Virus record (IMG/VR): IMGVR_UViG_3300014494_000005
Location: 186,001 to 250,000 of that record
Length of the DNA stretch: 64,000 bases
Strand: one strand, 5' to 3'
Below the pieces are notes generated by a model, which worked only from the letters and a program-made list of their open reading frames with translations, ran no database searches and had not been told where the DNA came from. Positions 16,318 to 64,000 of the stretch are shown piece after piece; the stretch's first letter is position 1; every line of letters begins with the position of its first letter. The translations under genes were made by a program, and so were the position numbers.

Positions 16318-16371
16318 TAGGATTACCATTTATATTTTGATTTTCATAGTATTTATATTAAATAAAATATT

Positions 16372-41670: not shown

Positions 41671-41681
41671 ATTATATTTTA

Positions 41682-51838: not shown

Positions 51839-51929
51839 TTTTTTATAAATACTAAATATATTATTTAAAAGTTGATGAATATCATCAAAAATATTGAAAT
51901 TATATTTACAATCTATGTATTTATGAACA

Positions 51930-52080
51930 GAGAATCATTGCTTAATTAGTAATTAAGTTAGCTCTGAGAACAGGAATGATTTTTAAAAATTTATTGCCAG
52001 AAAGTGGTTATGTAAATTTTTAAGACTTGACTAAGAATTTTAAAAGTAATTGCATCACAATAAAAGTGATGCAATTTTTT
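51930..52080 (+). ncRNA. Candidate structured small RNA
   Basis: GTATTTATG at 51917-51925, nested hairpins, terminator at 52048-52080, no substantial ORF. Confidence 0.35.
52048..52080 (+). terminator. Intrinsic terminator
   Basis: aattgcatcac-aataaaa-gtgatgcaatt-tttt. Confidence 0.8.
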
Positions 52081-52103
52081 ATAAAAATATTTTTCAATTT
52101 TTA

Positions 52104-52134
52104 TTTGTATTTATAATTTTATTGCATATATTTG
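52104..52134 (+). promoter_or_regulatory. Bacteroidota primary-sigma promoter for tRNA operon 1
   Basis: TTTG (52104-07) -N19- TATATTTG (52127-34), exact consensus spacing. Confidence 0.85.
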
Positions 52135-52171
52135 TAGTCATTTTGTTATTCATATTATGGATTTTTAGATT

Positions 52172-52246
52172 ATGAAAAATTTAATACATATTCAACCCCA
52201 ACCACAGCAACATCCACAGATGTCTGAATGGGGAAATTATGCTTAA
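52172..52246 (+). CDS. Attenuator leader peptide 1, MKNLIHIQPQPQQHPQMSEWGNYA
   Basis: 10 of 11 consecutive codons are His/Gln/Pro; contains antiterminator strand GAATGGGG (52226-33). Confidence 0.85.
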   Translation: MKNLIHIQPQPQQHPQMSEWGNYA

Positions 52247-52277
52247 ATTTTTCGAAAGAAGTTTTAGGTTAATGTTG

Positions 52278-52305
52278 ACCCCATTCGTAAGAGTGGGGTT
52301 TTTTT
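52278..52305 (+). terminator. Attenuator terminator 1
   Basis: accccattc-gtaa-gagtggggt-tttttt; its 5' arm CCCCATTC is complementary to 52226-52233. Confidence 0.9.
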
Positions 52306-52316
52306 ATTATATATAT

Positions 52317-52401
52317 CGGGGTGTAGGTCTGTAGTTGGTAGCAGTCCTGCCTTGGAAGCAGGTGGAGAAATCCCTCGCACGTTCGAACCGTGTCACCCCG
52401 A
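52317..52401 (+). tRNA. tRNA-Pro(TGG) with long variable arm
   Basis: cggggtg/caccccg acceptor; cctgc-CTTGGAA-gcagg; gga-gaaa-tcc variable hairpin; TTCGAAC T loop. Confidence 0.9.
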
Positions 52402-52473
52402 AGTGATTGATGTTAAATTACTTGCACGTAGTAATCACTGCATAACCAAAAGGTTAACTAAAAATTTAGCAAA

Positions 52474-52484
52474 GTTCTTTGAAA
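52474..52484 (+). promoter_or_regulatory. boxA-like antitermination motif GTTCTTTGAAA
   Basis: Resembles rRNA-operon boxA; preceded by small hairpins; similar motifs at 54522 and 57995. Confidence 0.5.
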
Positions 52485-52511
52485 TACCTAATAATAATAT
52501 ATAATTTATAT

Positions 52512-52585
52512 GGGATGATTGGTGTAGCGGTAGCATGCCAGATTGTGGTTCTGTCGGGGAGGTTTCAAATACCTCATCACCCCCA
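52512..52585 (+). tRNA. tRNA-His(GTG)
   Basis: Encoded G-1 opposite C73; TTGTGGT anticodon loop; gaggt-TTCAAAT-acctc T arm. Confidence 0.88.
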
Positions 52586-52642
52586 AATTCTCTAGTGATG
52601 TAATTAATATATTGCTGGTTTGAATATATTGAAACAATAAAT

Positions 52643-52729
52643 TGTTCTGTGATGAAATTGGCTAAACATGTCAGACTTTGACTCTGATGCTCTTTAGTGA
52701 GTTTGTAAGTTCGAATCTTACCAGAACAG
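52643..52729 (+). tRNA. tRNA-Gln(TTG) with long variable arm
   Basis: tgttctg/cagaaca acceptor, G73; tcaga-CTTTGAC-tctga; gctc-tttagt-gagt variable hairpin. Confidence 0.9.
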
Positions 52730-52778
52730 CAATATTAATTTTTTTAATTATCTTTGTTAAAATTTTAAATTAATTATT

Positions 52779-53732
52779 ATGTCATATAATTTATTTCTTG
52801 ATGACTTCCGCAGTCCTATCGATTCTTTTTATTATTTAGGGAATCCAATATATAATATTCTTGATTGGAAAATTGTACGAAATTATGATGAATTTGTGAA
52901 AACGATTCAAGAAAATGGTATTCCAGAAACTATTAGTTTTGACCATGATTTGGAAAATTCTGAAGAGTGGATGGATATTATTGGATATGAAGGAATTTAC
53001 ATGGTTTCAAATTTTGGTCGTATTTTAAGAACAAAAAAATCAAAAGGTACAACAGGTAATAATATTTTAACTCCATTAAAAAACATATCTGGATTATATG
53101 TAACATTATATAATTGCGGTAAAAATATACACAAAAAAATTCATAGATTAGTTTTAGAATCATTTATGGGTATTAATAATGAAAAATCACAAGTTAATCA
53201 TATTGATGGAAATAGATGGAATAATCATATTAATAATTTAGAGTGGTGTACATCATCTGAAAATATATGGCATTCACATAATGTATTATATAGAGATTTT
53301 TCTGCATATGGTGAAAACCATAAAAATAGTATGACAGTATCTCAATATGATATAAATAATAATCTAATTAATATTTATGGTTCAGTTAATGAAGCAGGAA
53401 GGCAATTAAATATTAGTTTTTCGAACATTGCAAAATGTGCTAGAGGTGAAAGAAAAATTGCTGGTGGATTTATTTGGAAATATGAAAATCTCAAAGTAAC
53501 AATAAATACAAAAATTTCACACATTGAATATAAAGATTATGCTAAGAATTTCTTTATACCTAAATATGAAGAAAAAACTGGTTATCATTGTGCTAAATGG
53601 TTAATAGATTATTGCATTGACAATAAATTAGAATTACCAAAAACAATTTTAATACACTCAATGAATCCAGTTGGAAGTCGAAATATTAAATCATTATTTG
53701 ATAGTTATTTCAAATCACTTAATTTATCTTAA
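52779..53732 (+). CDS. Cyclic-phosphate-processing receiver-like (cREC) protein with an in-frame NUMOD4-HNH endonuclease insert
   Basis: LFLDDFR..ISFDHDL N-half and EEKTGYHCAKWL..HSMNPVG C-half flank EEWMDIIGYEGIYMVSNFGR (NUMOD4), VNHIDGNRWNNHINNLEW (HNH) and a NUMOD1-like end. Confidence 0.7.
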   Translation: MSYNLFLDDFRSPIDSFYYLGNPIYNILDWKIVRNYDEFVKTIQENGIPETISFDHDLENSEEWMDIIGYEGIYMVSNFGRILRTKKSKGTTGNNILTPLKNISGLYVTLYNCGKNIHKKIHRLVLESFMGINNEKSQVNHIDGNRWNNHINNLEWCTSSENIWHSHNVLYRDFSAYGENHKNSMTVSQYDINNNLINIYGSVNEAGRQLNISFSNIAKCARGERKIAGGFIWKYENLKVTINTKISHIEYKDYAKNFFIPKYEEKTGYHCAKWLIDYCIDNKLELPKTILIHSMNPVGSRNIKSLFDSYFKSLNLS

Positions 53733-53735
53733 TTT

Positions 53736-54152
53736 TTATTTAACCCAAAATTTTCCTAATAATGTAATAATTGTGATTAGTATTGATATTCCCGCAACAA
53801 TGTATGCAATCATAGCATTTCCACCTGCTTTTATATTTTCAGATTTTTCGACTTTAATTGTAAGTGCATCAATTTTATCATTAGCATTTTTTAACAATAC
53901 TTCTGTCTCAATACGTGGCATTAATGTTCTCGACTGGTCACCAAGTTGTGCACGAAATTCATTAACACATTCAAAACGTTTTTCTGTTGCAACCTCTGCC
54001 TTATTAACAGCTAATTCCATTGCTTGATACCTTTGAGTTACACGTTCGTCTCTTTCAGCAAGCAATATTTTATAATGTTCATATTGATTTTTTAATACAA
54101 CATCATAATGCTCTTTAAGAGCTTCAAGCGTCCAAATTGTGTTATTTTCCAT
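53736..54152 (-). CDS. Coiled-coil protein with C-terminal TM helix (holin-like?)
   Basis: Long coiled coil ending in a hydrophobic helix. Confidence 0.5.
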   Translation of the reverse strand: MENNTIWTLEALKEHYDVVLKNQYEHYKILLAERDERVTQRYQAMELAVNKAEVATEKRFECVNEFRAQLGDQSRTLMPRIETEVLLKNANDKIDALTIKVEKSENIKAGGNAMIAYIVAGISILITIITLLGKFWVK

Positions 54153-54250
54153 TAATTTATTAGTGTTAGATATTTATTAGCCATTTAATGTTAATAAATA
54201 CTTTTTAGAACGTCTAAAAATATTGTATATAAAAAATAATTTAAAAAAAG

Positions 54251-54281
54251 TTTGTATATATTGTAACATTTTATATCTTTG
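54251..54281 (+). promoter_or_regulatory. Bacteroidota primary-sigma promoter for tRNA operon 2
   Basis: TTTG (54251-54) -N19- TATCTTTG (54274-81), followed by CA. Confidence 0.85.
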
Positions 54282-54321
54282 CAACGTATTTAGAATAAAA
54301 GAAACTATTTTTAATTTTAAA

Positions 54322-54414
54322 ATGATGAAAAAAGTACTCGACATATTGGTATCAGAGATGGCAGTTGTCCTATTATGGGCAGATGCAGAAGATACATTAT
54401 ATTCAGTCGGGTAA
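54322..54414 (+). CDS. Attenuator leader peptide 2, MMKKVLDILVSEMAVVLLWADAEDTLYSVG
   Basis: Codons cover every anticodon of the downstream operon; contains antiterminator strand CAGTCGGG (54404-11). Confidence 0.85.
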   Translation: MMKKVLDILVSEMAVVLLWADAEDTLYSVG

Positions 54415-54450
54415 TATTTATTACAAATAACACCTCCTTTCTTAAATGAA

Positions 54451-54486
54451 AAATCCCGACTGCTAAAATGGTCGGGATTTTTTTTT
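54451..54486 (+). terminator. Attenuator terminator 2
   Basis: aaatcccgac-tgctaaaatg-gtcgggattt plus T run; CCCGACTG (54455-62) is complementary to 54404-54411. Confidence 0.9.
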
Positions 54487-54490
54487 AGAA

Positions 54491-54520
54491 TTTGTAACAA
54501 ATAAAATTTTTCTTTGTATA
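54491..54520 (+). promoter_or_regulatory. Variant phage promoter TTTGTAACA-N15-TGTATA just after the attenuator
   Basis: One mismatch to the motif seen exactly at four other sites. Confidence 0.45.
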
Positions 54521-54521
54521 C

Positions 54522-54534
54522 TGTTCTTTGACAT
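54522..54534 (+). promoter_or_regulatory. boxA-like motif TGTTCTTTGACAT
   Basis: Resembles rRNA-operon boxA; 12 nt before the first tRNA. Confidence 0.55.
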
Positions 54535-54545
54535 GTTGGAAATTC

Positions 54546-54615
54546 GTTCTCGTAGTATAATGGTTAGTATGTATCACTGTCTATGATAAGGAGGGGTTCG
54601 AATCCCACGGGGACG
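54546..54615 (+). tRNA. tRNA-Asp(GTC)
   Basis: gttctcg/cggggac acceptor, G73; tatca-CTGTCTA-tgata; T stem imperfect. Confidence 0.85.
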
Positions 54616-54686
54616 GCAATGATTATTAATGTGTTATAATAATTATCTGTTATATTAAATTATATTAAAAATGAAATAATTAATTT

Positions 54687-54770
54687 GCTGCATTATACAA
54701 GTGGTTAAAGTGGCTTGCCCTTCAAGCAAGTGCCGAAAGGCTTCGCAGGATTCGAATTCCTCATGCAGTA
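54687..54770 (+). tRNA. tRNA-Glu(TTC) with C33 and long variable arm
   Basis: gctgcat/atgcagt acceptor; cttgc-CCTTCAA-gcaag; gcc-gaaa-ggc variable hairpin. Confidence 0.8.
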
Positions 54771-54797
54771 CTGAAATATAAATTTAAAATTTAAATT

Positions 54798-55187
54798 ATG
54801 AAAAATTTGTATATTAATGCAACTCACAGTACACCCGCAGTTTTTTTTAATATTAATAAAGGTATTCTTACAATAACAGGAAAATCATTTCCTGAGAATT
54901 CCTCAATGTTTTTTGATGATATTGATAAAGCATTAGATGAATTTATTAAAGAACATTCTAATGTTGATTTAACAATTACTTGTGAATTTGAATATATTAA
55001 TTCATTATCAAATAAAGCAGTTTTTAATATATTAGAAAAAGCAGCAAAATCTCTTAATAATGTTATAGTTGTTTGGAAATATGAAGAAAACGATGAAGAT
55101 ATGAAAGAGCAGGGAGAATTTTTTGAAACATCTTTTAAAACTAAAATTCATTTTCATTATAAACATTTTTTAATACAACCAGAATGA
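54798..55187 (+). CDS. SiaC-family (DUF1987) regulatory phosphoprotein
   Basis: T.STP.V.F....G.L.I.GKSFPEN...F; EYINSLS; VWKYEENDEDM.E.GE.F. Confidence 0.8.
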   Translation: MKNLYINATHSTPAVFFNINKGILTITGKSFPENSSMFFDDIDKALDEFIKEHSNVDLTITCEFEYINSLSNKAVFNILEKAAKSLNNVIVVWKYEENDEDMKEQGEFFETSFKTKIHFHYKHFLIQPE

Positions 55188-55192
55188 TAAAT

Positions 55193-55265
55193 GCTCGGTT
55201 CGTCTAATGGTTAGGACAAAAGATTCTCATTCTTTTAAATATGTTTTCGATTAACATACCGAGTA
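55193..55265 (+). tRNA. tRNA-Glu(CTC)
   Basis: gctcggt/accgagt acceptor; aaaga-TTCTCAT-tcttt; atgtt-TTCGATT-aacat. Confidence 0.88.
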
Positions 55266-55343
55266 CAGAAATAAATATGATGTTGGAAATACTAACATTA
55301 TCATATAAAATTTGATTTAATGCTGGCTTTTATCAACAAATAT

Positions 55344-55418
55344 ATTCCCTTAACTCAGATGGGTCAGAGTGTTTGCCTTACAAGCAAAATGTCGTAGGTT
55401 CGAAGCCTACAGGGAATA
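55344..55418 (+). tRNA. tRNA-Val(TAC)
   Basis: attccct/agggaat acceptor; tttgc-CTTACAA-gcaaa; canonical cloverleaf. Confidence 0.95.
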
Positions 55419-55503
55419 CAAAAGATTGTAGTGCCAAATACAATCATAATATCGCCTTAATTACCGATATTTAATATTTATCGGTTAAAAAGGTGATACC
55501 TTT

Positions 55504-55591
55504 CTCTCAGTGTTGTAACTGGTAGCCAAGCTGGTTTAAGAAACCAGTGCGAAATAATAGTAGCGTGTCGGTTCGAGTCCGACTTGAGAGA
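55504..55591 (+). tRNA. tRNA-Leu(AAG), A34, long variable arm
   Basis: ctctcag/ttgagag acceptor, A73; ctggt-TTAAGAA-accag places AAG at 34-36. Confidence 0.8.
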
Positions 55592-55599
55592 CAATAAAC

Positions 55600-55674
55600 G
55601 TGAATGTAGCCAAATGGTTAATAGGCAATCGATTTAGACTCGAAAATTTGCTGGTTCGACTCCAGTCATTCACA
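55600..55674 (+). tRNA. tRNA-Leu(TAG) with short variable loop
   Basis: gtgaatg/cattcac acceptor; tcga-TTTAGAC-tcga; ~5-nt variable region. Confidence 0.8.
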
Positions 55675-55740
55675 CAAAGATATTTTTTAAAAAACAATAA
55701 TCTTTCCTAATATTTCATGTATTTATATTAAATATAATAT

Positions 55741-56469
55741 ATGAAATATACAAAAGAATTTTTAGAACCAATTGTTCTTAAAAGCAAAGCAATTAGTGAA
55801 GTATTACGTTATTTAAAATTAAATGCTAATGGTGGTAATCATGCACATATTTCAAAAACCATAAAAAAATATAATATTGATACATCACATTTTCTTGGAC
55901 AAAGTTGGAATAGAGGTAAATCGCCACGAAATAGACATACCATAGAAAGTTTCATTAAACTTGTTTTAAAATTAAATGGTATGGGATGGCAAAGTCATCA
56001 AATAAAATTAAAATTATTTGAATTAAATTTAAAAGAAAGAAAATGTGGAATTTGTGGACAAAATGAAATATGGAATAATAATAAACTTGGTTTAGAGTTA
56101 GACCATATTAATGGAATACACAATGATAATAGATTAGAAAATTTAAGAATTTTATGTCCAAATTGTCATTCACAAATGCCAACACAAGGTGTTAGAAATA
56201 TTCATAATGGAAAAATAATTAACATTAAAGTTCATAAAGAAAAAATAATAAAAAATAAAATAATTAATATTTGTAATTGTGGTAAAAAAATAAAAAATAA
56301 TTCTAAAACATGTGTTAATTGCTATTCATTAAAACAAAGAAAAGTTAATAGACCATCATTTGAAACACTTCAAGAAGAAGTTAAAACATTAGGATATACT
56401 GGAACTGGAAGAAAATATGGTGTGAGTGATAATACGATAAGAAAATGGATTAAATTTTACACGAAATAA
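55741..56469 (+). CDS. HNH homing endonuclease inside the tRNA array
   Basis: CGICG...LELDHINGIHNDNRLENLRILCPNCH; C-terminal HTH; GTATTTATA at 55719. Confidence 0.9.
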   Translation: MKYTKEFLEPIVLKSKAISEVLRYLKLNANGGNHAHISKTIKKYNIDTSHFLGQSWNRGKSPRNRHTIESFIKLVLKLNGMGWQSHQIKLKLFELNLKERKCGICGQNEIWNNNKLGLELDHINGIHNDNRLENLRILCPNCHSQMPTQGVRNIHNGKIINIKVHKEKIIKNKIINICNCGKKIKNNSKTCVNCYSLKQRKVNRPSFETLQEEVKTLGYTGTGRKYGVSDNTIRKWIKFYTK

Positions 56470-56472
56470 AAT

Positions 56473-56548
56473 GGGGTATGGGACTGCTAGGGTTGGTCAT
56501 CTCGTCTGCACCGAGAAAATCAGGAGGATTCGAATTCCTCATGCTCCA
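56473..56548 (+). tRNA. tRNA-Ala(TGC) with C33
   Basis: ggggtat/atgctcc acceptor with G3:U70 and A73; tctcg-TCTGCAC-cgaga. Confidence 0.85.
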
Positions 56549-56587
56549 CATTATCAAATAGTTATATAGATAATCACAATAAAATAT

Positions 56588-56661
56588 GGCACAGTACTCC
56601 AATTGGTAGAGAGAAACGGCTTAAACCCGTTAAAGTGTGAATTCGAATTTCACTTGTGCTA
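56588..56661 (+). tRNA. tRNA-Leu(TAA) with short variable loop
   Basis: ggcacag/ttgtgct acceptor; aacgg-CTTAAAC-ccgtt; 5-nt variable region. Confidence 0.82.
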
Positions 56662-56683
56662 CAAAATAAATTAATTATAATAT

Positions 56684-56755
56684 ACGTCTGTCGTCTAATG
56701 GTTAAGATAACGGCTTCCAACCCCGTGGATGAGGTTTCGATTACTTCCAGACGTG
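56684..56755 (+). tRNA. tRNA-Trp(CCA)
   Basis: A1-U72 and G73; acggc-TTCCAAC-cccgt with a 31-39 mismatch. Confidence 0.82.
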
Positions 56756-56821
56756 CTAAAATAAAAAATAAATATTATATTATTTGCATATATTTATATA
56801 ATAAACTAAATTTGTCAAATT

Positions 56822-57550
56822 ATGTTAATAATAAATTACAATAAAAAAGATTATTACGATGGTGTTGTTGGTACGATGGGTATCGATAAAACACTTGTTT
56901 ATGACCGTAAAATAATTGAGGTTGAAGAAAAAAAAATTCCATCAATATTTCAAAGAAAGGGATTTTCTTGGAAAAAAAGTAAAGATTCACCTTTTTTAAA
57001 TATTGAAAATCATACAATAAAAAATGAACAACATAAAAATTATCAAAATTGTAGTTCTTTTATTATTGGATTTTGTGGAAAACTATATATTGGTTGGAAA
57101 TTATATAGCGAAAACAGAAAAGTTTATCCAGAAAAACTTACAACTACAATTACATATGATTTTGATTTAATAAAAACAATTATTGATAATAAAGGTTGGT
57201 ATGGAAACCTTGAAGAGCAGTATAATTATATTAAAAATTATAATTCACTTCAATTATTTAGAGATTTTAAAGCACCTGTTTTTATTTATGATAGTGATTA
57301 TAATAGAATAAATATTGGTCATTATCATAAACGTAATGAAAAACTTTTTATTAATCCAATTTTAAGCGATTATCATTTTTATAAAATATTTGATAGTTTT
57401 CAAGCATTTCAAGAAATAAGTATGTTTATGGGTGGTGTGCTTGGTAAAGGCGAAAAAGAAATTATTGAAGTGGCTGATAAATATAAAATTACTCAACATG
57501 GTTTTGATTATAAATGGAGTTTTAGAAAAAAATCTGAAAAGAATAAATGA
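56822..57550 (+). CDS. Hypothetical protein
   Basis: 242-aa ORF within the tRNA operon. Confidence 0.6.
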   Translation: MLIINYNKKDYYDGVVGTMGIDKTLVYDRKIIEVEEKKIPSIFQRKGFSWKKSKDSPFLNIENHTIKNEQHKNYQNCSSFIIGFCGKLYIGWKLYSENRKVYPEKLTTTITYDFDLIKTIIDNKGWYGNLEEQYNYIKNYNSLQLFRDFKAPVFIYDSDYNRINIGHYHKRNEKLFINPILSDYHFYKIFDSFQAFQEISMFMGGVLGKGEKEIIEVADKYKITQHGFDYKWSFRKKSEKNK

Positions 57551-57813
57551 AACAAGAATTGCATAAAATATTTATAATTCCTGCTCGATTTATTAAACAA
57601 ACTAAAGATAATAAATATGTTATTCGATGTCTAATTGAAAAAAATATTACTGAAGACCGTATATTTGATGATAATTCACTTAAAGGATTAATAAATCCTA
57701 AGTATTTATTAATCGGAATAATGACAGGAGTTGGATATATGCAAATAAATTTTGTTGATGCTAATGATTATGAAAAAATGTTTAATGTAAAATGGAAAAT
57801 TTTAGTAAAATAA
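57547..57813 (+). CDS. Hypothetical protein
   Basis: ATGA-type overlap with the previous gene. Confidence 0.5.
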   Translation: MKQELHKIFIIPARFIKQTKDNKYVIRCLIEKNITEDRIFDDNSLKGLINPKYLLIGIMTGVGYMQINFVDANDYEKMFNVKWKILVK

Positions 57814-57986
57814 GCGATGAAATAATATCACAACTTAAATCTATATGTTATAGTGGTGATTTATCTGATATTGGTAATGAAATTGGTATTGTAATTGCTA
57901 AATATTTTGATAAAGATAATACTGTTGATGATTTCATTCATGGTTTAAAACATGGAATATCATTAACTGATGGAACACATGGTTAA
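57792..57986 (+). CDS. Hypothetical protein
   Basis: 64-aa ORF. Confidence 0.45.
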   Translation: MENFSKISDEIISQLKSICYSGDLSDIGNEIGIVIAKYFDKDNTVDDFIHGLKHGISLTDGTHG

Positions 57987-58009
57987 TATAATAAGTTCTT
58001 TAAAATAAT

Positions 58010-58372
58010 GGGGATGAATGGATTTGACTGTATGTAGAAAAATGATGTAAGCAAGTAGTAGTTGAATCGGACTACTTTTAAAAAGGTTCAAAACAATAAA
58101 TGCAGAAGACATTATGTCTATTCCTACTTCCTTGACAAAAGGAAATAGCGTATTTGTAAAGAGTGCTGAACTTGCAATTGCGTAATAGGAAAAAAATAAA
58201 CAGCAAAAAACTTCCAAGTCAGAAGGGAAGTAAAAACAATTCTGGACAGTTTTGTAGTTGTTCTGGAAAAATACAATTAACATTTTGCTGATTTAGGAAA
58301 ATCAAATAAACTTGTAGAAAACTTATTAATCACATTGCAACACCGGGGAATCGATGCCCCGCATCTCCACCA
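58010..58372 (+). ncRNA. ssrA: tmRNA; tag reading frame AEDIMSIPTSLTKGNSVFVKSAELAIA (58102-58182, stops TAA TAG)
   Basis: GGGGATG...GGATTTGAC 5' end pairs with CATCTCC-A-CCA 3' end with G3:U; ATAAAT-GCA resume context; hydrophobic Ala-ending tag. Confidence 0.93.
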
Positions 58373-58408
58373 AATATTTTTCATCTCCACAGTATTTATA
58401 TTAAAATA

Positions 58409-58960
58409 TTGATGGAGATGAAAAATTTAAAAAAAAGAAAAACTAAATTAATTAAATGCGATAATTGTGGAAATGATTTTGAAAAATCGATATCCGAAAT
58501 AAAAAGAAATAAAAATCATTTTTGTTCATTAAGATGTTCAGCAATCCATCGTAATGATATCAATCGAAAAAATTTTGAAGGATATATAGGAAATCCAAAA
58601 TTTTTAATTGCAAATAATCATAAAGATGAATATACAGGTTTTCGTGATTTTATTAGAAGAGCAAAACAAAGAAATAAATTAGGGAATTTAACATTAATTG
58701 ATTTAAAAGAACAATGGCAAAAACAAAATGGAATTTGTCCTTATACTGGAATACAATTAGAATTGCCAAATTATTCTAAAACAAAAAAATTTTCAATACA
58801 AGAAGCAGCATCTTTAGATAGAATAAATTCAAATAAACCATATGAAAAAGATAATATTGTTTTTGTAAGTACACCAATTAATTATATGAAAAATACGATG
58901 ACAGAAGAAGAAACAATTGCATTTTGTAAAAAAATTGCATTATTTTGGAATAATAAATAA
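58409..58960 (+). CDS. HNH-like endonuclease with N-terminal zinc ribbon
   Basis: CDNCG..FCSLRCS; CPYTG..SLDRINSNKPYEKDNIVFV; GTATTTATA at 58392. Confidence 0.75.
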   Translation: MMEMKNLKKRKTKLIKCDNCGNDFEKSISEIKRNKNHFCSLRCSAIHRNDINRKNFEGYIGNPKFLIANNHKDEYTGFRDFIRRAKQRNKLGNLTLIDLKEQWQKQNGICPYTGIQLELPNYSKTKKFSIQEAASLDRINSNKPYEKDNIVFVSTPINYMKNTMTEEETIAFCKKIALFWNNK

Positions 58961-58961
58961 T

Positions 58962-59048
58962 GGCGAAGTGATGAAATAGGTAGTACATGCAGGTCTTAAA
59001 AACCTGTGAACAGTAATGTTCGTGTGGGTTCGATTCCCATCTTCGCTA
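58962..59048 (+). tRNA. tRNA-Leu(TAA), canonical class II
   Basis: ggcgaag/cttcgct acceptor; caggt-CTTAAAA-acctg; long variable arm. Confidence 0.93.
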
Positions 59049-59092
59049 CGAATAAATTAATTAAAGTATTTATATAAAAACTTATAATAACA

Positions 59093-59257
59093 ATGAATAT
59101 ATTAATTATAAATCAATCAACACCAATTAACTATCCAATAATAATTGTACCTGTTGGTTGTCAATTTAATATACCTAATAGAATAATGTGTAGTGGTGGT
59201 TTTCTTGTTTATAATAAACCATCTGAAAAAATATTAATTAATTATGGCAAATATTAG
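59093..59257 (+). CDS. Small hypothetical protein (54 aa)
   Basis: Read by hand; follows GTATTTATA at 59066. Confidence 0.35.
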   Translation: MNILIINQSTPINYPIIIVPVGCQFNIPNRIMCSGGFLVYNKPSEKILINYGKY

Positions 59258-59360
59258 AAAACCACATCCAAAAGAAGATGATTGTGGATGTGGAAAATCA
59301 GTTAAAATAACTGAAAGAAAAAAAATTGAATATAGACGAATTATAAAGAAAAGAGGATAA
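59244..59360 (+). CDS. Small basic protein with CGCG motif (38 aa)
   Basis: MANIRKPHPKEDDCGCGKSVKITERKKIEYRRIIKKRG. Confidence 0.4.
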   Translation: MANIRKPHPKEDDCGCGKSVKITERKKIEYRRIIKKRG

Positions 59361-59443
59361 CTCCTTGTGATGAAATTGGTAGCACGTGCTCGCCTCAAAA
59401 GCGAGTGCCTTCGGGCGTGTCGGTTCGACTCCGACCAAGGAGA
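59361..59443 (+). tRNA. tRNA-Leu(CAA)
   Basis: ctccttg/caaggag acceptor; ctcgc-CTCAAAA-gcgag; gcc-ttcg-ggc variable arm. Confidence 0.95.
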
Positions 59444-59462
59444 CAAATAGAAGGGAAATTTT

Positions 59463-59957
59463 ATGTATATGGTATTACAGATTCCCATGCGTGAACAGAA
59501 TTATGATTTTGATTGTAGTCTTGCAGTAGCATGGTCGTACTTAAAACATTCTAAAATAAAAGTTGATTATAATACACTTTTAAAAATATCAAAAATTTCA
59601 CCAATTGATGGATTATGTCCAGAAAAATTAGTTATTTTACTAAAAAAATTTGGTTTAGAAACCAATTTAGAAGAACGTAAAAATATTAAATATTTAAAAA
59701 ATCAAATAATTACTAAAAAACCAGTAATTGTTCTTTTACAAGCAAATAAAGAATATAAGAAATCTTGGAAAAATACTTGGACTCACGGACATTATTGCAT
59801 TATATTTGGTTTTGATGACTTTCGGGTATTTATTTATGACCCATATATTGGTGGAATTAAATTATTCGCATATGACCAATTTAATAATCGTTGGCATGAT
59901 GAATGGAATGGTAAAAAATATATTAAGTCAGTAATAATAAAAAATGAAAATTTATGA
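59463..59957 (+). CDS. Peptidase C39-like cysteine protease
   Basis: EQ..DFDCSLA (Gln/Cys), GHYCII.GFD (His), YDP (Asp). Confidence 0.8.
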   Translation: MYMVLQIPMREQNYDFDCSLAVAWSYLKHSKIKVDYNTLLKISKISPIDGLCPEKLVILLKKFGLETNLEERKNIKYLKNQIITKKPVIVLLQANKEYKKSWKNTWTHGHYCIIFGFDDFRVFIYDPYIGGIKLFAYDQFNNRWHDEWNGKKYIKSVIIKNENL

Positions 59958-60118
59958 ATTTTGGATTAAGAAAAAATAGTAAAATAAAATTCAAAGAAAT
60001 ACCTGAAGAAATTGATGAATCTGAAATTGATTTAGATAATCCAGAAGCAATGGAATTAACATGGAAAAGCATTGAATGGTCATTGAAAAAACATAAAGAT
60101 ATAATCTCAAAAATATAA
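59954..60118 (+). CDS. Small hypothetical protein (54 aa)
   Basis: Read by hand; ATGA overlap with the C39 gene. Confidence 0.4.
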   Translation: MNFGLRKNSKIKFKEIPEEIDESEIDLDNPEAMELTWKSIEWSLKKHKDIISKI

Positions 60119-60170
60119 AATATGAAAAAAATTTTGAATTCTTGTAACGCACTAAAGCGTAACAAGAAAA

Positions 60171-60500
60171 ATGGGAAATAAAAATTTAGTAAAAACAACC
60201 ACAAATCGTGGCGAATTCAATCGTGCATATAAATTGCATCTTGAACGAATAGGAAAAATTCATTGTTCATACTGTGGTTTTCATCTTGGTGAAAATAATG
60301 GCAAAAAATGGTATGGTGGAATTATTTACGATGACATGGAAACTTGTCATGGTAAAAGAAAAGGAAATAATACAAGATTTCCAAACTGGAAATTGGTTTC
60401 TAAAAATAGAAAACAATGGATGCGAAAACCAATTAAAATTGTTGAAGAACATAGAATTGGACACAAAAGAACATATGTTGAGATTAAATTCTCAACATAA
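60171..60500 (+). CDS. Hypothetical basic protein
   Basis: CSYCG.H motif; WK..SK.RKQW ending. Confidence 0.5.
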   Translation: MGNKNLVKTTTNRGEFNRAYKLHLERIGKIHCSYCGFHLGENNGKKWYGGIIYDDMETCHGKRKGNNTRFPNWKLVSKNRKQWMRKPIKIVEEHRIGHKRTYVEIKFST

Positions 60501-60503
60501 TTT

Positions 60504-60574
60504 AGCGATGTCATTCAACGGTAGGATATCTCTCTCATAAGGAGCAAATACGAGTCCGATTCTCGTCATCGCTA
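60504..60574 (+). tRNA. tRNA-Met(CAT), probably elongator (Ile2 not excluded)
   Basis: agcgatg/catcgct acceptor with G2-C71, C3-G70, A73; CTCATAA loop; T loop TCCGATT. Confidence 0.8.
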
Positions 60575-60580
60575 CAAATA

Positions 60581-60605
60581 AAAAAATTCGTCATTTGACG
60601 AATTC
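60581..60605. terminator. Terminator hairpin at the end of tRNA operon 2 and the convergent gene
   Basis: aaaaaattcgtca-tt-tgacgaatt. Confidence 0.65.
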
Positions 60606-60625
60606 AGAATTCCAACATGTTTATT

Positions 60626-61072
60626 TTATTGAAAATTTACTTTGCAAGTTTGATTTTTGAAATCAAATTCTAAATCCTTAACATATAATGATTTACCTAA
60701 TATAAGTGAAGTTTTTTCGTTAATAACGAATTTCCATTTAGTTTCTTCGATATTTTTTTGCGATTTTTGTTCTATTTCATCTGAATGAATATTATGCATT
60801 TCCATATTATAAGTTCCTTCAAGTTTTTCTATACTAATAATAAAATTTTCAATACCCATATCATTTAACCAAAATGAAACTTGCCATGTGATTATAATAT
60901 TACTTTCTGTAACATCAGCATCAAATTCTGTTGAAAAACCACTATAATTATAAAAATACACATTTTTTACGAGTTGTTTAAAATTAAAATTATCACCACC
61001 TATAACATATGATTCATTAATTACATTCTTTTCAATTTCTTCATTTACCACTTTTTTTATAGAACTCACCAT
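60626..61072 (-). CDS. Hypothetical protein
   Basis: IKKVVNEEIEKNVINE N-terminus; phage motif at 61088-61096. Confidence 0.55.
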   Translation of the reverse strand: MVSSIKKVVNEEIEKNVINESYVIGGDNFNFKQLVKNVYFYNYSGFSTEFDADVTESNIIITWQVSFWLNDMGIENFIISIEKLEGTYNMEMHNIHSDEIEQKSQKNIEETKWKFVINEKTSLILGKSLYVKDLEFDFKNQTCKVNFQ

Positions 61073-61148
61073 AAAAACACAATTTTATATAAATACTCTA
61101 TGTTTTCTTAAATTTCTTTTATACATTTGCACATATTAAAACAAAAGA

Positions 61149-61178
61149 TTTGTAACATTATTACAAAAAATTCGTATA
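61149..61178 (+). promoter_or_regulatory. Phage promoter motif TTTGTAACA-N15-CGTATA (plus TACATTTG at 61122-61129)
   Basis: Exact motif 8 nt before ATG 61186. Confidence 0.65.
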
Positions 61179-61185
61179 AATTAAA

Positions 61186-62049
61186 ATGGTTTATAATTAT
61201 AATAAACAACATTGTTGGCAATATGATATTAGGTTAAATAATTTAACCAATGATTTAAAACAAGCAAATATAACTCTTGATGAATCGAAAAATTTAAAAG
61301 TATCTGATTTTAAATTTCAATTTGAAGAAAAAGATTTATGTTTTCAAGAAATTAAAAGTTTTATTGAAAAACATGAATGGTTGGGTAGAGTAAGTTTATA
61401 TCCAACACATATTTTTACTGCACGATATAATGGAATTTTAGCAGGTGTAGTAATTATTGATATGCCAAGTGTGTTTTCGAAATTATTGGGAGAAGAAACA
61501 AAAAAGATTGAAAGATTAATAAGCAGAGGTGCTTGTATTAGTTGGTCGCCCAAAAATTTAGGTAGTTCTTTGATTATGTTTGCAATTAATTGGATGGTAA
61601 AAAATACACAATATCGTTTATTTGTTGCTTATTCAGATGTTGAAGCTAAAGAATTAGGCACAATTTATCAAGCATGTAATTTTTATTATTTGGGTAAGAA
61701 ATCTGGTGCAAAAAATCAATATAAAATTGAAACCGGAAGATGGGTATCCGATAGATATTTTAGAGCAAGGTCTGTTTATAAAAGACTTGCAAAAGAAAAT
61801 GAAATTATTTGGCATGATGAATGGCAAAACGGAGATAGTGTAATGTTTGATAAAATGCCGGAAGAAATTGCATTACAAATAAGAAAACTTTCAAAGGACT
61901 ATTTATTGTCCTGTGAAAGTAGAGAAATGAAACCAAAACATAAATATGCATATGTTTTGGGTAAAAATAATACTGAAACAAAAAAATTAAGAAGAATATT
62001 TATAGAAAGAAACAAAATTTATTCATATCCAAAAGAAAGGGGAAATTAA
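61186..62049 (+). CDS. Mom-like GNAT-fold DNA modification protein
   Basis: LAGVV, RLISRGAC..PKNLGS.LI, VAYSD...ELGTIYQACNFYYLG, KHKYAY.L. Confidence 0.7.
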   Translation: MVYNYNKQHCWQYDIRLNNLTNDLKQANITLDESKNLKVSDFKFQFEEKDLCFQEIKSFIEKHEWLGRVSLYPTHIFTARYNGILAGVVIIDMPSVFSKLLGEETKKIERLISRGACISWSPKNLGSSLIMFAINWMVKNTQYRLFVAYSDVEAKELGTIYQACNFYYLGKKSGAKNQYKIETGRWVSDRYFRARSVYKRLAKENEIIWHDEWQNGDSVMFDKMPEEIALQIRKLSKDYLLSCESREMKPKHKYAYVLGKNNTETKKLRRIFIERNKIYSYPKERGN

Positions 62050-62050
62050 A

Positions 62051-63142
62051 GTGAAATTACTTGAAAAAGTTGATTGGAAAATATTAAATAACTATATTGA
62101 TAATAGTCTCATTATAGCAAATAAACACCCAAATTATGAAATTTGGATTTTGAACTATTCAGTAAAAGCTCAATCAAAAAAATTTTGGGACGAATATACT
62201 ATGTCTTGTCGTGGATTGGTTGTTGATGTTGAAGGTAATATTTTAGCACGTCCATTTATGAAATTTAAAAATTATGAAGAATATGATTCTTCTGAAATTG
62301 ATTTATATATGACTCAAGAATTTGAAATATTTGAAAAAGTCGATGGTTCACCTATTATCTTATTTTACTATGCACCACGTATGGAATGGATTGTGGCAAG
62401 TAGAGGTTCATTTATTTCAGAACAATGTATTGAAGCACAAAAAATGATTGATATTAACATATACGATAAATTGAATAAAAATTGTACTTTTTTATTTGAA
62501 GTATTATATCCAGAAAATCGTATTGTTGTTGATTATGGTGATAGAAGAGAACTTGTATTACTTGGAAGAATTGTAACTGAAACCGGAATTGAAGCATATT
62601 ATAATGAATTAGTTGCACAATATTCAAATTATTTTTCAATTGTTAAGAAATATGATATAAATAATATTAAAAATCTTAAAGATTTACAAAAACTTGAAGA
62701 AGAAAATCGTGAAGGATTTGTTGTAAGATTTAAAGATGGTTTTAGAGTTAAAGTTAAGTTTGCAGAATATTGTAGATTACATGTTATTTTAACAAATGTT
62801 TCAAACTTAACAATTTGGGAACATTTAATGAATAATTATGATTTTGATTCATTACTTGACAGAGTTCCAGATGAATTTTATAATTGGTTAAAGAAAACAA
62901 CAAAAATTATACAAACTGATTTTAATGAAATTGAAAGATTGTCATTAAAAGAATTTGTAAGAATTTACCATGTTAATGGAATTACAAATCGTAGAGAATT
63001 TGCTATGGAAGCATTAAAGACAGAATATCGTTCAATATTGTTTAAGTTATATGACAAAAAAAACTACGATGATATTATTTGGAAACAAGTAAGACCCGTT
63101 TACAGCAAACCATTTAAAGATGGTTTTGAATATAGTGTTTAA
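62051..63142 (+). CDS. RNA ligase (T4 Rnl1-like)
   Basis: CRGLVVD..ILARPF.KF.NY; FEKVDGS motif I; FLFEV; EGFVV...KVK. Confidence 0.88.
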   Translation: MKLLEKVDWKILNNYIDNSLIIANKHPNYEIWILNYSVKAQSKKFWDEYTMSCRGLVVDVEGNILARPFMKFKNYEEYDSSEIDLYMTQEFEIFEKVDGSPIILFYYAPRMEWIVASRGSFISEQCIEAQKMIDINIYDKLNKNCTFLFEVLYPENRIVVDYGDRRELVLLGRIVTETGIEAYYNELVAQYSNYFSIVKKYDINNIKNLKDLQKLEEENREGFVVRFKDGFRVKVKFAEYCRLHVILTNVSNLTIWEHLMNNYDFDSLLDRVPDEFYNWLKKTTKIIQTDFNEIERLSLKEFVRIYHVNGITNRREFAMEALKTEYRSILFKLYDKKNYDDIIWKQVRPVYSKPFKDGFEYSV

Positions 63143-63170
63143 AAAGCGAAGAATTTTCTTCGCTTTTTTT
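63141..63170 (+). terminator. Intrinsic terminator
   Basis: aaaaagcgaagaa-tt-ttcttcgcttttttt. Confidence 0.8.
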
Positions 63171-63222
63171 GTATTTATTTGTATTTATTGTAAATGTTAT
63201 TAAGTGAATTAATCGTATAATC

Positions 63223-64000
63223 ATGAATATCATTCAAATAATTAAAGAAGAAGTTAAAAATTATTTAGCTGAATCTAAACAAACAGAACAACAAGCTATT
63301 GCTATTTTAAAAAAAATGGTATAGATGATAATAATATAAATAATTTAATAAATAAATTTCGAGGTATTGATAAGTCAAAAAATCAAATTCTTATTCCTAT
63401 TATGTCTAAAGCATATCTTGAAGTTGGTGATAGAGGATTAAATGATATATTACGTTTATTTACAACAGTATCTGAATTGCTTAATACAAATAAAATTACT
63501 ACACCACAAATATCCGATGTAGGATATATTATTAATAATAAAACATTTTCTAATTATCTAAAATTTGCTGAATTTATTCATGGATTAGAATCTATGTCTA
63601 AAGGTCTCGAACAATGGAAAGGCAAAATTAATGTAGACACCAACGAATCACCAATTTGGGAAGGTAATAACATTAAAATTTATGATGGTAATGATGTTGG
63701 TAAATGTATTCATTATACTACTGGTGCACTTACTGGACAACATTATGGTTTTTGTATTGGGCAACCAGCAAATACTATGTGGCAAAGTTATCGTGATACT
63801 AAAACAAGTACATTTTATTATGTTATTGATAGTAATCGTGATTTAAGTGACCCATTACATATTGTTGTTGTTGATGCTACTGATAGAGGAATTGAATTAA
63901 CTGATGCAAATAATACTACAGGTAATATTGAAAAATATGGTAATAAGATTCAAAGTTATTTTAAATATTTAAAAAATAAAAAAGTTCCAGTAGAAAAATT
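63223..64000 (+). CDS. Hypothetical protein, frameshifted at the A8 run (63309-63316), runs off the window end
   Basis: Frame 0 MNIIQIIKEEVKNYLAESK... stops at 63324; the -1 frame is open from before the A run to the window end. Confidence 0.45.

What the first reader, a model, noticed from the sequence alone, without database searches (positions are those of the whole stretch)
52100..63170. Integrated counter-defence island against tRNA depletion
Within 11 kb lie two codon-sensing attenuators, 15 tRNAs (many with non-canonical features), a tmRNA, a cREC-like gene and an Rnl1-like RNA ligase. Established knowledge: T4 Rnl1/Pnk repair PrrC-cut tRNA, and cREC-type receiver domains were proposed to process cyclic-phosphate RNA ends. 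Inference: a sense/replace/repair/rescue system against host anticodon nucleases or toxins, switched on only when a defence has actually fired.
Basis: inference. Interest (0 to 1): 0.85.

Follow-up and report, generated by a model that had tools for sequence, protein, structure and literature searches.

The report
Phage tRNA operons switched by codon-sensing leaders
A giant T4-like phage from peat puts its own tRNA genes behind short leader peptides made of exactly the codons those tRNAs read, so slow decoding should switch on replacement tRNAs; I found no earlier report of this control on tRNA genes.

Summary
There are two leader-peptide attenuators, 15 tRNA genes (14 solid, one marginal), a tmRNA, a cREC gene and a T4 Rnl1-type RNA ligase.

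The attenuators are the real discovery. Each has a Bacteroidota-type promoter motif, a 24-30 codon ORF, a region 2 that perfectly complements the 5' arm of an intrinsic terminator, and then tRNA genes. Leader 1 is rich in His, Gln and Pro codons and precedes tRNA-Pro/His/Gln. Leader 2 is rich in Val, Leu, Asp, Glu, Ala and Trp codons and precedes tRNAs for those amino acids.

The same genome has two more units beyond the window. From leader 4's peptide I predicted its tRNA set before fetching the DNA, and the prediction held. All 29 anticodon species have a cognate codon in their own leader. I found 42 distinct leaders in 44 related loci, all following the rule, with compensatory changes in the antiterminator.

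The "integrated, defence-triggered island" reading is only partly supported. The attenuators sense slow decoding from any cause. The ligase and tmRNA lie behind promoter-like motifs of their own, no 5'-kinase was found, and unrelated genes are interspersed. I found no published precedent.

The parts
52104..52134 (+). Promoter-like motif 1 (TTTG, 19 nt spacer, TATATTTG; Bacteroidota -33/-7 type), 38 nt upstream of leader 1
   Evidence: Pattern search. The motif is not enriched window-wide (5 matches against 5.65 expected), so its role as a promoter is inferred from position.
52172..52246 (+). Leader ORF 1, MKNLIHIQPQPQQHPQMSEWGNYA. It holds region 1 (CCCCA, 52196-52200) and region 2 (GAATGGGG, 52226-52233).
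   Evidence: 10 of 23 residues are P/H/Q against 2.0 expected.
52277..52306 (+). Intrinsic terminator 1. The 5' arm holds region 3 (CCCCATTC, 52279-52286), followed by the 3' arm and a U-run.
52316..52730 (+). tRNA operon 1: Pro(tgg) 52316-52402 (long variable arm), His(gtg) 52513-52584, Gln(ttg) 52643-52730 (long variable arm)
52779..53732 (+). cREC gene with an in-frame HNH/NUMOD homing-endonuclease insertion (residues ~67-244). In relatives it is uninterrupted and always follows the last tRNA-Gln.
54251..54281 (+). Promoter-like motif 2 (TTTG, 19 nt spacer, TATCTTTG). The surrounding ~45-nt block is nearly identical upstream of leader 4.
54322..54414 (+). Leader ORF 2, MMKKVLDILVSEMAVVLLWADAEDTLYSVG. 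It holds region 1 (ACTCGAC, 54336-54342) and region 2 (CAGTCGGG, 54404-54411, ending at the stop codon).
54452..54487 (+). Intrinsic terminator 2. Region 3 is CCCGACTG at 54455-54462, followed by the 3' arm and a U-run.
54545..56756 (+). tRNA operon 2: Asp(gtc) 54545-54617, Glu(ttc) 54687-54771, Glu(ctc) 55193-55266, Val(tac) 55344-55419, Leu(aag) 55504-55592, Leu(tag) 55600-55675, Ala(tgc) 56473-56549, Leu(taa) 56588-56662, Trp(cca) 56684-56756. A SiaC-family ORF (54798-55187) and an HNH ORF (55741-56469) lie between them.
56783..56814 (+). Promoter-like motif ahead of the conserved ORF 56822-57550 (phrog_4243, unknown function). It suggests the genes downstream, including the tmRNA, have their own promoter.
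58010..58372 (+). tmRNA. The tag ORF at 58102-58185 reads AEDIMSIPTSLTKGNSVFVKSAELAIA.
   Evidence: Relatives carry tmRNAs with similar tags.
58962..60575 (+). Three tRNAs with no attenuator of their own: Leu(taa) 58962-59049, Leu(caa) 59361-59444, Met(cat) 60504-60575. Their codons TTG and ATG occur in leader 2, and in relative L006 these tRNAs sit inside operon 2.
61186..62049 (+). Mom-family ORF lying directly upstream of the ligase, with one base between them
62051..63142 (+). T4 Rnl1-type RNA ligase, followed by a terminator at 63141-63168

Best explanation
The tRNA genes of this ~349-kb T4-like phage sit in operons that each begin with a ribosome-mediated transcription attenuator. The host is probably Bacteroidota. 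Two units lie in the window and two more lie downstream in the same genome.

Proposed mechanism:
1. A host-type promoter drives a 24-42 codon leader that holds at least one codon for every anticodon species in the operon behind it.
2. If all those aminoacyl-tRNAs are plentiful, the ribosome runs to the 3' end of the leader. It then either covers region 2 or lets region 1 pair with region 2. The terminator (regions 3 and 4) forms and the tRNA genes stay off.
3. If any sampled tRNA is scarce, the ribosome stalls on region 1. Region 2 pairs with region 3, the terminator cannot form, and the whole operon is transcribed.
4. The new tRNAs relieve the stall and close a negative feedback loop.

This is a self-regulating supply of a nearly complete tRNA set. 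It would compensate for any loss of decoding capacity, whether from host anticodon nucleases, host shut-off or the phage's own codon demand.

I read the tmRNA, cREC and Rnl1-type ligase as neighbouring translation-maintenance genes of the same phage clade, not as parts of the same switch. cREC may be co-transcribed with operon 1.

Shown by sequence: the anatomy, the codon match, the conservation and the covariation. Inferred: the switching itself, the promoter assignments, the host, and the physiological trigger.
For: Codon content:
- Residues belonging to the operon's own amino-acid set: L1 10/23, L2 19/29, L3 9/29, L4 37/41. Binomial P values are 8e-6, 1e-4, 0.017 and 5e-9.
- All 29 anticodon species have a cognate codon in their own leader. 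For random ORFs, P is below 5e-5 for L2 and 7.5e-4 for L4.

Prediction test: from leader 4's peptide I predicted tRNAs for T, C, S, I, R, N, F and G. Fetching the DNA showed Thr x3, Cys, Asn x2, Ile, Ser x2, Phe, Gly, Met/Ile2 and Arg.

Structure:
- A 7-10 nt perfect complement between regions 2 and 3 occurs in 14 of 15 leaders, and shuffles reach this in 0.06-1% of trials.
- Only the two leader terminators, among 13 hairpins in the window, have such a complement of 8 nt or more.
- A co-transcriptional fold model gives the antiterminator when a ribosome sits on the regulatory codons, and for L1 and L2 it gives the terminator otherwise.

Conservation: 42 distinct leaders in 44 related loci all match the class of tRNAs downstream.

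Covariation in 8 class-2 leaders: the antiterminator has 4 pairs and 7 cells with changes on both sides, reached by 0-6 of 500 shuffles, and the slid controls are much lower. The terminator has 3 such pairs.

In class-3 leaders, conservation peaks at YY.GKKSYKK and at region 2. No Rfam family, T-box included, matches the leaders.
Against: - There is no experimental or read-level evidence of termination or read-through. The metatranscriptome data are low-depth contigs and may include DNA.
- At equilibrium the full-length RNAs always fold into the terminator. For L3 and L4 the model prefers the region 2-region 3 pairing even without a ribosome, so switching depends on kinetics I cannot compute.
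- Region 1-region 2 pairing is short, at 4-6 nt.
- The promoter motif is not enriched window-wide.
- One leader codon, CGC in L4, has no cognate phage tRNA among those found.
- All leaders come from one phage clade, so there are only four independent leader classes.
Confidence: 0.65

Rival explanations
1. The whole 11 kb is one integrated counter-defence system (sense, replace, repair, rescue) that evolved against host anticodon nucleases or tRNA toxins and is switched on only after such a defence fires.
For: - The attenuators would respond to tRNA cleavage. There is precedent that toxin-driven tRNA loss stalls ribosomes, and its authors link that stalling to induction of a uORF-attenuated gene (PMC10287673).
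- The phage tRNAs have unusual anticodon loops and body shapes. Non-U33 occurs in 51 of 464 tRNAs across the clade, including 9 of 15 Glu(ttc) and 9 of 64 Lys(ttt). Long variable arms occur in 42 of 267 tRNAs that are not Leu, Ser or Tyr. This fits the proposal that phage tRNAs evade tRNases (PMC10264068).
- The tRNA set covers all 20 amino acids. It includes C34 tRNAs for G-ending codons that the phage rarely uses: GC3 is 0.11 in its genes but 0.22-0.34 in the leaders.
- cREC always follows operon 1, and the ligase and tmRNA are syntenic in all relatives.
Against: - The ligase and tmRNA have no attenuator and lie behind promoter-like motifs of their own.
- No 5'-kinase or Pnk was found in about 97 kb examined, although a distant phage, pT24, has Pnk next to its ligase.
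- cREC function is only a published prediction.
- Unrelated genes are interspersed.
- An attenuator cannot tell defence from any other cause of stalling.
- Sensors covering every amino acid look like general homeostasis rather than a response to a particular nuclease.
Confidence: 0.25
2. The leaders are timing or nutrient sensors. They report amino-acid starvation or the general translation state of the infected cell, and tune tRNA transcription to the infection stage rather than to tRNA loss.
For: Leader-peptide attenuators classically report aminoacyl-tRNA charging, which also falls on amino-acid starvation (textbook knowledge of the trp and his operons). The model predicts termination when no ribosome loads on L1 or L2, which ties tRNA expression to active translation.
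Against: Making more tRNA does not relieve amino-acid starvation, so that response would be futile. The isoacceptor-level codon sampling (four different Leu codons for four Leu tRNAs, all four Thr codons, both Lys and both Glu codons) points to sensing individual tRNA species rather than amino acids.
Confidence: 0.07
3. The short ORFs are chance ORFs or small protein genes, and the hairpins are ordinary terminators of upstream transcription units. No regulation is involved.
For: AT-rich genomes have many short ORFs, and there is no direct expression evidence.
Against: The codon match, the full anticodon coverage, the region 2 complement, the covariation, the successful prediction and the conservation of the regulatory codons while the rest of the peptide drifts all argue against it.
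Confidence: 0.03

Closest known systems
Leader-peptide (ribosome-mediated) transcription attenuators of amino-acid operons and of pheST (trpL, hisL, leuL, thrL, pheL, pheM)
   Same: A short translated leader with a run of regulatory codons, mutually exclusive antiterminator (regions 2 and 3) and terminator (regions 3 and 4) hairpins followed by a U-run, and read-out of aminoacyl-tRNA supply through ribosome position.
   Different: The regulated genes are the tRNAs themselves, so the loop is closed directly on the sensed molecule. Each leader mixes codons of 2 to 9 amino acids and samples each isoacceptor, acting as an OR gate. The system is viral, and four units partition the phage's whole tRNA set.
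T-box riboswitches
   Same: A transcription antitermination decision that depends on tRNA status, placed upstream of translation-related genes.
   Different: A T-box binds uncharged tRNA directly, has a single specifier codon and is not translated. There is no Rfam T-box match here, and the leaders have start and stop codons and a multi-codon content.
T4 tRNA repair (PrrC against Pnk and Rnl1) and phage tRNAs as counter-defence (van den Berg et al. 2023, PMC10264068)
   Same: A T4-like phage with an Rnl1-type ligase that keeps the catalytic motifs, many phage tRNAs, and unusual anticodon loops.
   Different: No Pnk was found nearby. In those systems tRNA expression is not known to be regulated by the decoding state.
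uORF-attenuated stress genes that respond to ribosome stalling (for example whiB7; PMC10287673)
   Same: Ribosome stalling on a short upstream ORF, including stalling caused by toxin-mediated tRNA loss, turns on downstream genes.
   Different: Those systems induce resistance or stress regulators, not the depleted tRNAs, and they carry no codon-to-gene matching.
cREC-linked RNA repair neighbourhoods (Iyer et al. 2021, PMC7824862)
   Same: A cREC domain in a jumbo phage that also encodes an RNA ligase.
   Different: Here cREC is tied to a tRNA operon (after tRNA-Gln in 5 genomes) and lies about 9 kb from the ligase. In this genome it also carries an HNH insertion.

Membership tests
Ribosome-mediated (leader-peptide) transcription attenuator | A short ORF with start and stop codons, enriched in the codons whose decoding is sensed | tested here: met
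   Enrichment P ranges from 8e-6 to 5e-9 for three leaders and is 0.017 for L3. Anticodon coverage is 29 of 29.
Ribosome-mediated (leader-peptide) transcription attenuator | An intrinsic terminator between the leader and the regulated genes | tested here: met
   Stems have 10-14 bp and are followed by runs of 7-9 U, ending 10-60 nt before the first tRNA.
Ribosome-mediated (leader-peptide) transcription attenuator | An antiterminator pairing (regions 2 and 3) that excludes the terminator, placed so that ribosome position decides between them | tested here: met
   Perfect 7-10 nt complements, compensatory changes, and region 2 lying in the last codons of the ORF.
Ribosome-mediated (leader-peptide) transcription attenuator | A region 1-region 2 pairing that sequesters region 2 when the ribosome is not stalled | tested here: inconclusive
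   It is present in the minimum-free-energy folds of L1 and L2 but is only 4-6 nt long. For L3 and L4 the equilibrium model prefers the region 2-region 3 pairing.
Ribosome-mediated (leader-peptide) transcription attenuator | Read-through that rises when the cognate aminoacyl-tRNA is limiting | not testable with these tools
   This needs reporter assays, Term-seq or in vitro coupled assays. The metatranscriptome contigs are uninformative.
T-box riboswitch | The conserved T-box fold with a specifier loop and a tRNA acceptor-binding bulge | tested here: not met
   No Rfam match at E up to 1 in 51500-64000.
T4 Rnl1-type RNA ligase (PF09511) | Nucleotidyltransferase motifs I (KxDG), III, IV (EGxV) and V (KxK) | tested here: met
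   K96, D98, G99, E150, E221-V224, K234 and K236 are invariant in 9 relatives and align to the T4 Rnl1 motifs.
T4 Rnl1-type RNA ligase (PF09511) | Works together with an end-healing polynucleotide kinase/phosphatase | tested here: not met
   No Pnk was found by Pfam or PHROGs among ORFs of the window and about 10 kb downstream. tblastn with phage pT24's Pnk against the window and downstream loci also found nothing. The rest of the 349-kb genome was not examined.
cREC (PF20274) | Match to the family profile and conserved acidic motifs | tested here: met
   (74 bits against a cut-off of 27). One search shows the LDDFR, SFDHDL and HSMN motifs intact on both sides of the HNH insertion.
cREC (PF20274) | Cyclic-phosphate processing activity | not testable with these tools
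   This is only a published prediction (PMC7824862).
tmRNA (RF00023) | Full-length covariance-model match and a tag reading frame | tested here: met
   (68.6 bits, model positions 1-374). One search gives the tag, which ends in ...AELAIA.
allo-tRNA (8/4 or 9/3 tRNAs with long variable arms; PMC5389517) | An acceptor stem of 8-9 bp combined with a T stem of 3-4 bp | tested here: not met
   The long-arm Trp, Glu and Gln tRNAs are drawn with 7/5 stems, and the long-arm Trp keeps G73 and the CCA anticodon. tRNA-Pro is drawn with one possible extra acceptor pair (8/5).

The most novel reading that the evidence does not exclude
A virus carries its own "tRNA-stat". Per-isoacceptor decoding sensors detect when host immunity (anticodon nucleases, tRNA-tail cutters or toxins) or host shut-off removes tRNAs, and they induce a near-complete replacement set. 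Members of that set are structurally disguised, with class-II-type variable arms on Trp, Glu, Gln, Pro, Val and Lys tRNAs, arm-less Leu tRNAs and C33 anticodon loops, so that the same nucleases miss them. cREC, the Rnl1-type ligase and the tmRNA would mend and rescue what remains.
Probability: 0.3. Interest if true: 0.92.

Novelty: new variant of a known kind. Interest (0 to 1): 0.86.

Why it matters
Leader-peptide attenuation has been known for about fifty years as a control of amino-acid biosynthesis genes and a few synthetase genes. Here the same device is wired to the tRNA genes themselves, in a virus.

The leaders act as multiplexed sensors, with one codon or more for each isoacceptor, and together they cover all 20 amino acids. 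That gives a simple, testable answer to how large phages regulate their tRNA arsenals. It also offers a way to test the debated purpose of phage tRNAs, codon compensation against counter-defence: deplete one tRNA and see which operon turns on.

The leaders are compact natural biosensors of decoding capacity and could be reused as reporters. The clade-wide class-II-shaped tRNAs for amino acids that never use that shape in bacteria raise separate questions about tRNA identity and nuclease evasion.

Tried and rejected
- Known RNA families: nothing at the leaders, T-box included.
- Stop-codon suppressor tRNAs or recoding: no tRNA in the window has an anticodon complementary to a stop codon.
- allo-tRNA (8/4 or 9/3) identity for the long-arm tRNAs: not met.
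- Equilibrium folding of the full leader with a masked ribosome footprint: it always gives the terminator and so is uninformative, as for trp. I replaced it with a model truncated before region 4.
- Close relatives in GenBank phages: none by DNA, and the best ligase match is 35% identical. Tenacibaculum phage pT24 has few tRNAs and no leader, so it is not a model.
- Search for a Pnk with pT24's protein: no hit.
- Function of the conserved ORF 56822-57550 (phrog_4243): no Pfam hit, the Atlas gave only weak leads, an AlphaFold model had pLDDT 66, and Foldseek against the PDB found nothing at E below 0.4.
- Metatranscriptomes: four peat RNA runs hold low-depth contigs over the region, with no usable 3'-end information and possible DNA carry-over.
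- A natural loss of tRNA-His in relative L050, which would have tested co-variation: relaxed ARAGORN found the His tRNA, so there was no loss.
- The terminator at 8974-9003, which has a 7-nt upstream complement: it is a repeated terminator with no leader.
- Four literature searches for leader-peptide control of tRNA genes found nothing. The library holds open-access papers only.

Full report
WHAT IS THERE

The window has 26% G+C and comes from a T4-like myophage. It encodes a Gp23-type capsid protein, a Gp20-type portal, a tail sheath, a T4-type terminase, dUTPase, ThyA and many homing endonucleases. The same sequence is contig IMGVR_UViG_3300014494_000005, 348,923 bp long. It is found in peat and permafrost metagenomes.

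- 15 tRNA genes, all on the + strand.
- A tmRNA scoring 68.6 bits on Rfam, with the tag AEDIMSIPTSLTKGNSVFVKSAELAIA.
- A cREC-domain gene.
- A T4 Rnl1-type ligase with motifs I, III, IV and V intact.

Of the tRNAs, 14 exceed Rfam's gathering score. The fifteenth, Ala(tgc) at 56473-56549, appears only with relaxed ARAGORN. It does have the G3:U70 pair, and relatives carry tRNA-Ala at the same place.

THE ATTENUATORS

Upstream of tRNA-Pro/His/Gln lies a 24-codon ORF, MKNLIHIQPQPQQHPQMSEWGNYA. Upstream of tRNA-Asp, Glu, Glu, Val, Leu, Leu, Ala, Leu and Trp lies a 30-codon ORF, MMKKVLDILVSEMAVVLLWADAEDTLYSVG. Each is followed by a strong intrinsic terminator.

Inside the last codons of each ORF is an 8-nt perfect complement (region 2) to the terminator's 5' arm (region 3):
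- Leader 1: GAATGGGG pairs with CCCCATTC.
- Leader 2: CAGTCGGG pairs with CCCGACTG.

Shuffled upstream sequence reaches this in 5 and 20 of 5000 trials. Among the 13 terminator-like hairpins of the window, only these two have such a complement of 8 nt or more. A further segment inside the regulatory codons (region 1) pairs with region 2 in the minimum-free-energy folds.

I modelled the transcript before region 4 is made. With a ribosome on the regulatory codons, region 3 is held by region 2, which is the antiterminator. With the ribosome at the leader's 3' end, or with no ribosome on L1 and L2, region 3 is left free for the terminator. With the whole terminator present, equilibrium folding always gives the terminator. 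The classical trp attenuator behaves the same way, so the decision must be kinetic.

CODON MATCH AND A PREDICTION

The same genome continues beyond the window (locus L003 position x equals window position x + 52050).
- Leader 3, MFTFGTYYYGKKSYKKQLMRIGNAVFKIQC, precedes Lys(ttt), Tyr(gta) and Lys(ctt).
- Leader 4, MMKTLTTNIFSSISTTTSRIGRTIFCSNFIGRNSNVSGILFS, precedes a further tRNA cluster.

From leader 4's peptide alone I predicted tRNAs for Thr, Cys, Ser, Ile, Arg, Asn, Phe and Gly. Fetching the DNA showed Thr(cgt), Thr(ggt), Cys, Asn, Ile, Ser(gct), Ser(tga), Phe, Gly, Met/Ile2(cat), Asn, Thr(tgt) and Arg(tct).

The four operons therefore partition the amino acids as {P,H,Q}, {D,E,V,L,A,W}, {K,Y} and {T,C,I,S,F,G,M,N,R}.
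- Residues of the operon's own set are enriched in each leader, with P values of 8e-6, 1e-4, 0.017 and 5e-9.
- At codon level, each of the 29 anticodon species has a cognate codon in its own leader. Examples are four different Leu codons for four Leu tRNAs, all four Thr codons, and both Lys and both Glu codons.
- Random ORFs of the phage reach full coverage with P below 5e-5 for L2 and 7.5e-4 for L4.
- The leaders use G- or C-ending codons two to three times more often than the phage's genes (GC3 0.22-0.34 against 0.11). Part of this reflects the G+C-rich pairing regions.

RELATIVES

IMG/VR and a metagenome scan with a ligase alignment gave more than 80 loci of one phage clade, with ligases 63-75% identical. 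They come from peat, sediments and activated sludge.

An unbiased finder required a terminator, an upstream complement to its 5' arm, and an ORF covering that complement. It recovered 55 leaders with 42 distinct peptides in 44 loci:
- 27 Tyr/Lys leaders before Tyr and Lys tRNAs.
- 8 Asp/Glu/Val/Leu/Ala/Trp leaders before that tRNA set.
- 3 Pro/His/Gln leaders before Pro, His and Gln tRNAs.
- 4 Thr/Ser/Arg/Ile/Gly/Phe/Cys/Asn leaders before that tRNA set.

There were no exceptions. In class-3 leaders, conservation peaks at YY.GKKSYKK and at region 2, while the rest of the peptide drifts.

In an alignment of eight class-2 leaders, the antiterminator helix has four pairs and seven cells with changes on both sides. 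For example, window AGTCGGG/CCCGACT corresponds to L053 GGTCGAG/CTCGACC. This is reached by 0-6 of 500 shuffles and is far above all slid controls. The terminator has three such pairs. These leaders are orthologues, so the independent evidence amounts to four leader classes plus the covariation.

WHAT THE OTHER PARTS SHOW

cREC. It follows the last tRNA-Gln and precedes leader 2 in five genomes, so it is a conserved tail of operon 1. By eye there is a TATCTTTG motif just upstream of it, so it may also have its own promoter. In this genome alone, a ~180-residue HNH/NUMOD endonuclease is inserted in frame after the SFDHDL motif. Its proposed cyclic-phosphate activity is a prediction from comparative genomics (PMC7824862).

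Ligase. It lies one base after a Mom-family gene, has no attenuator, and is followed by a terminator.

tmRNA. The tmRNA, Leu(taa), Leu(caa) and Met(cat) lie behind a promoter-like motif at 56783-56814. In relative L006, Leu(caa) and Met(cat) sit inside operon 2, and their codons TTG and ATG occur in leader 2.

Missing and interspersed genes. No polynucleotide kinase was found in the window or about 33 kb downstream. Ribonucleotide reductase and VWA proteins lie between operons 3 and 4.

So co-location is conserved, but it holds inside a single syntenic clade. A single integrated switch is not shown.

UNUSUAL tRNAs

Across the clade, counting distinct sequences at default ARAGORN settings:
- 42 of 267 tRNAs for amino acids other than Leu, Ser and Tyr are 82 nt or longer and have a long variable arm. 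By amino acid: Trp 13/26, Glu 6/16, Val 5/18, Gln 3/10, Lys 9/90, Pro 2/6, Cys 2/5.
- 40 of 95 Leu tRNAs lack the long arm.

The long-arm tRNA-Trp keeps G73, the CCA anticodon and 7/5 stems, so these are not allo-tRNAs. Genomes often carry a normal and a long-arm copy with the same anticodon.

About 11% of the tRNAs lack U33, counted at a relaxed threshold that may include some false calls. This includes 9 of 15 Glu(ttc) and 9 of 64 Lys(ttt). I cannot say what these features do. Evasion of tRNases is one reading (PMC10264068).

INTERPRETATION

The best-supported mechanism is classical ribosome-mediated attenuation applied to tRNA operons, giving feedback-controlled supply of a near-complete tRNA set. 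By standard wobble rules, which is my own inference, the set serves all 20 amino acids and every codon box except CGN.

Such a circuit responds to any shortage of decoding capacity. It would therefore counter tRNA-targeting defences without being specific to them.

NOVELTY

Four full-text searches found no report of leader-peptide control of tRNA genes, in phages or elsewhere. That library holds open-access papers only, so earlier work may exist. I rate the finding a new variant of a known kind: the mechanism is old, while the regulated target, the multiplexed isoacceptor-sampling leaders and the viral setting are new.

Noticed in passing
window 52779-53732: The cREC gene of this genome alone carries an in-frame HNH_3/NUMOD homing-endonuclease insertion (residues ~67-244) after the conserved SFDHDL motif. 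Four relatives have an uninterrupted cREC of ~125 residues. No intein or group I intron signature was seen.
   Followed up: partly
window 52316-52402, 52643-52730, 54687-54771, 55600-55675, 56588-56662; relatives L045-L124: A clade-wide pattern: class-II-shaped tRNAs (long variable arm) for Trp, Glu, Gln, Pro, Val, Lys and Cys, and Leu tRNAs without the long arm. A genome often holds a normal and a long-arm copy with the same anticodon. About 11% of the tRNAs lack U33. The function is unknown.
   Followed up: partly
L125 (JBAZIW010000001.1, 362,763 bp) = L061 (Ga0265297_10000074): A 362,763-bp contig deposited as a "Candidatus Paceibacterota" MAG carries a 71%-identical ligase. The same contig as L061 carries a Tyr/Lys leader and tRNA operon, so it looks like a relative of this phage rather than a bacterial genome.
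   Followed up: partly
window 54240-54295 and L003:20395-20452: A ~45-nt promoter block (GTTTGTATATATTGTAACATTTTATATCTTTGCAACGTATTTAGA) is almost identical upstream of leaders 2 and 4, and it is conserved in relatives L007 and L010.
   Followed up: partly
window 63224-63420: A short ORF stops at a TAG just after a run of eight A's. A long ORF continues in another frame (289 aa, continuing in L003:11352-12221). This could be a frameshift, a homopolymer sequencing error, or simply two genes.
   Followed up: no
window 28152-30080 (-), 15238-17106 (+), 40510-42878 (-): Mobile elements sit in core genes. The prohead protease ORF shows a weak intein-splicing match (E 1.3e-4, below Pfam's cut-off). 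A GIY-YIG endonuclease lies next to thymidylate synthase, which matches its profile in two stretches. The terminase N-terminal domain ORF is followed by a separate 386-residue ORF that may be its other half.
   Followed up: no
window 54798-55187: A SiaC-family (PF09345) ORF sits inside tRNA operon 2, between Glu(ttc) and Glu(ctc). It is present only in this genome and in L007.
   Followed up: partly
window 8190-8222 and 8974-9003: Two near-identical copies of one terminator hairpin (AACCCTCTTAAAACTTAATTTAAGA(A/G)GGTTTTTT) lie about 780 nt apart.
   Followed up: no
window 56822-57550, 60171-60500, 60626-61072 (-): Three ORFs of unknown function are conserved in nearly all relatives, between the tRNA operons, the tmRNA and the ligase. 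For the first (phrog_4243) an AlphaFold model (pLDDT 66) has no match in the PDB.
   Followed up: partly
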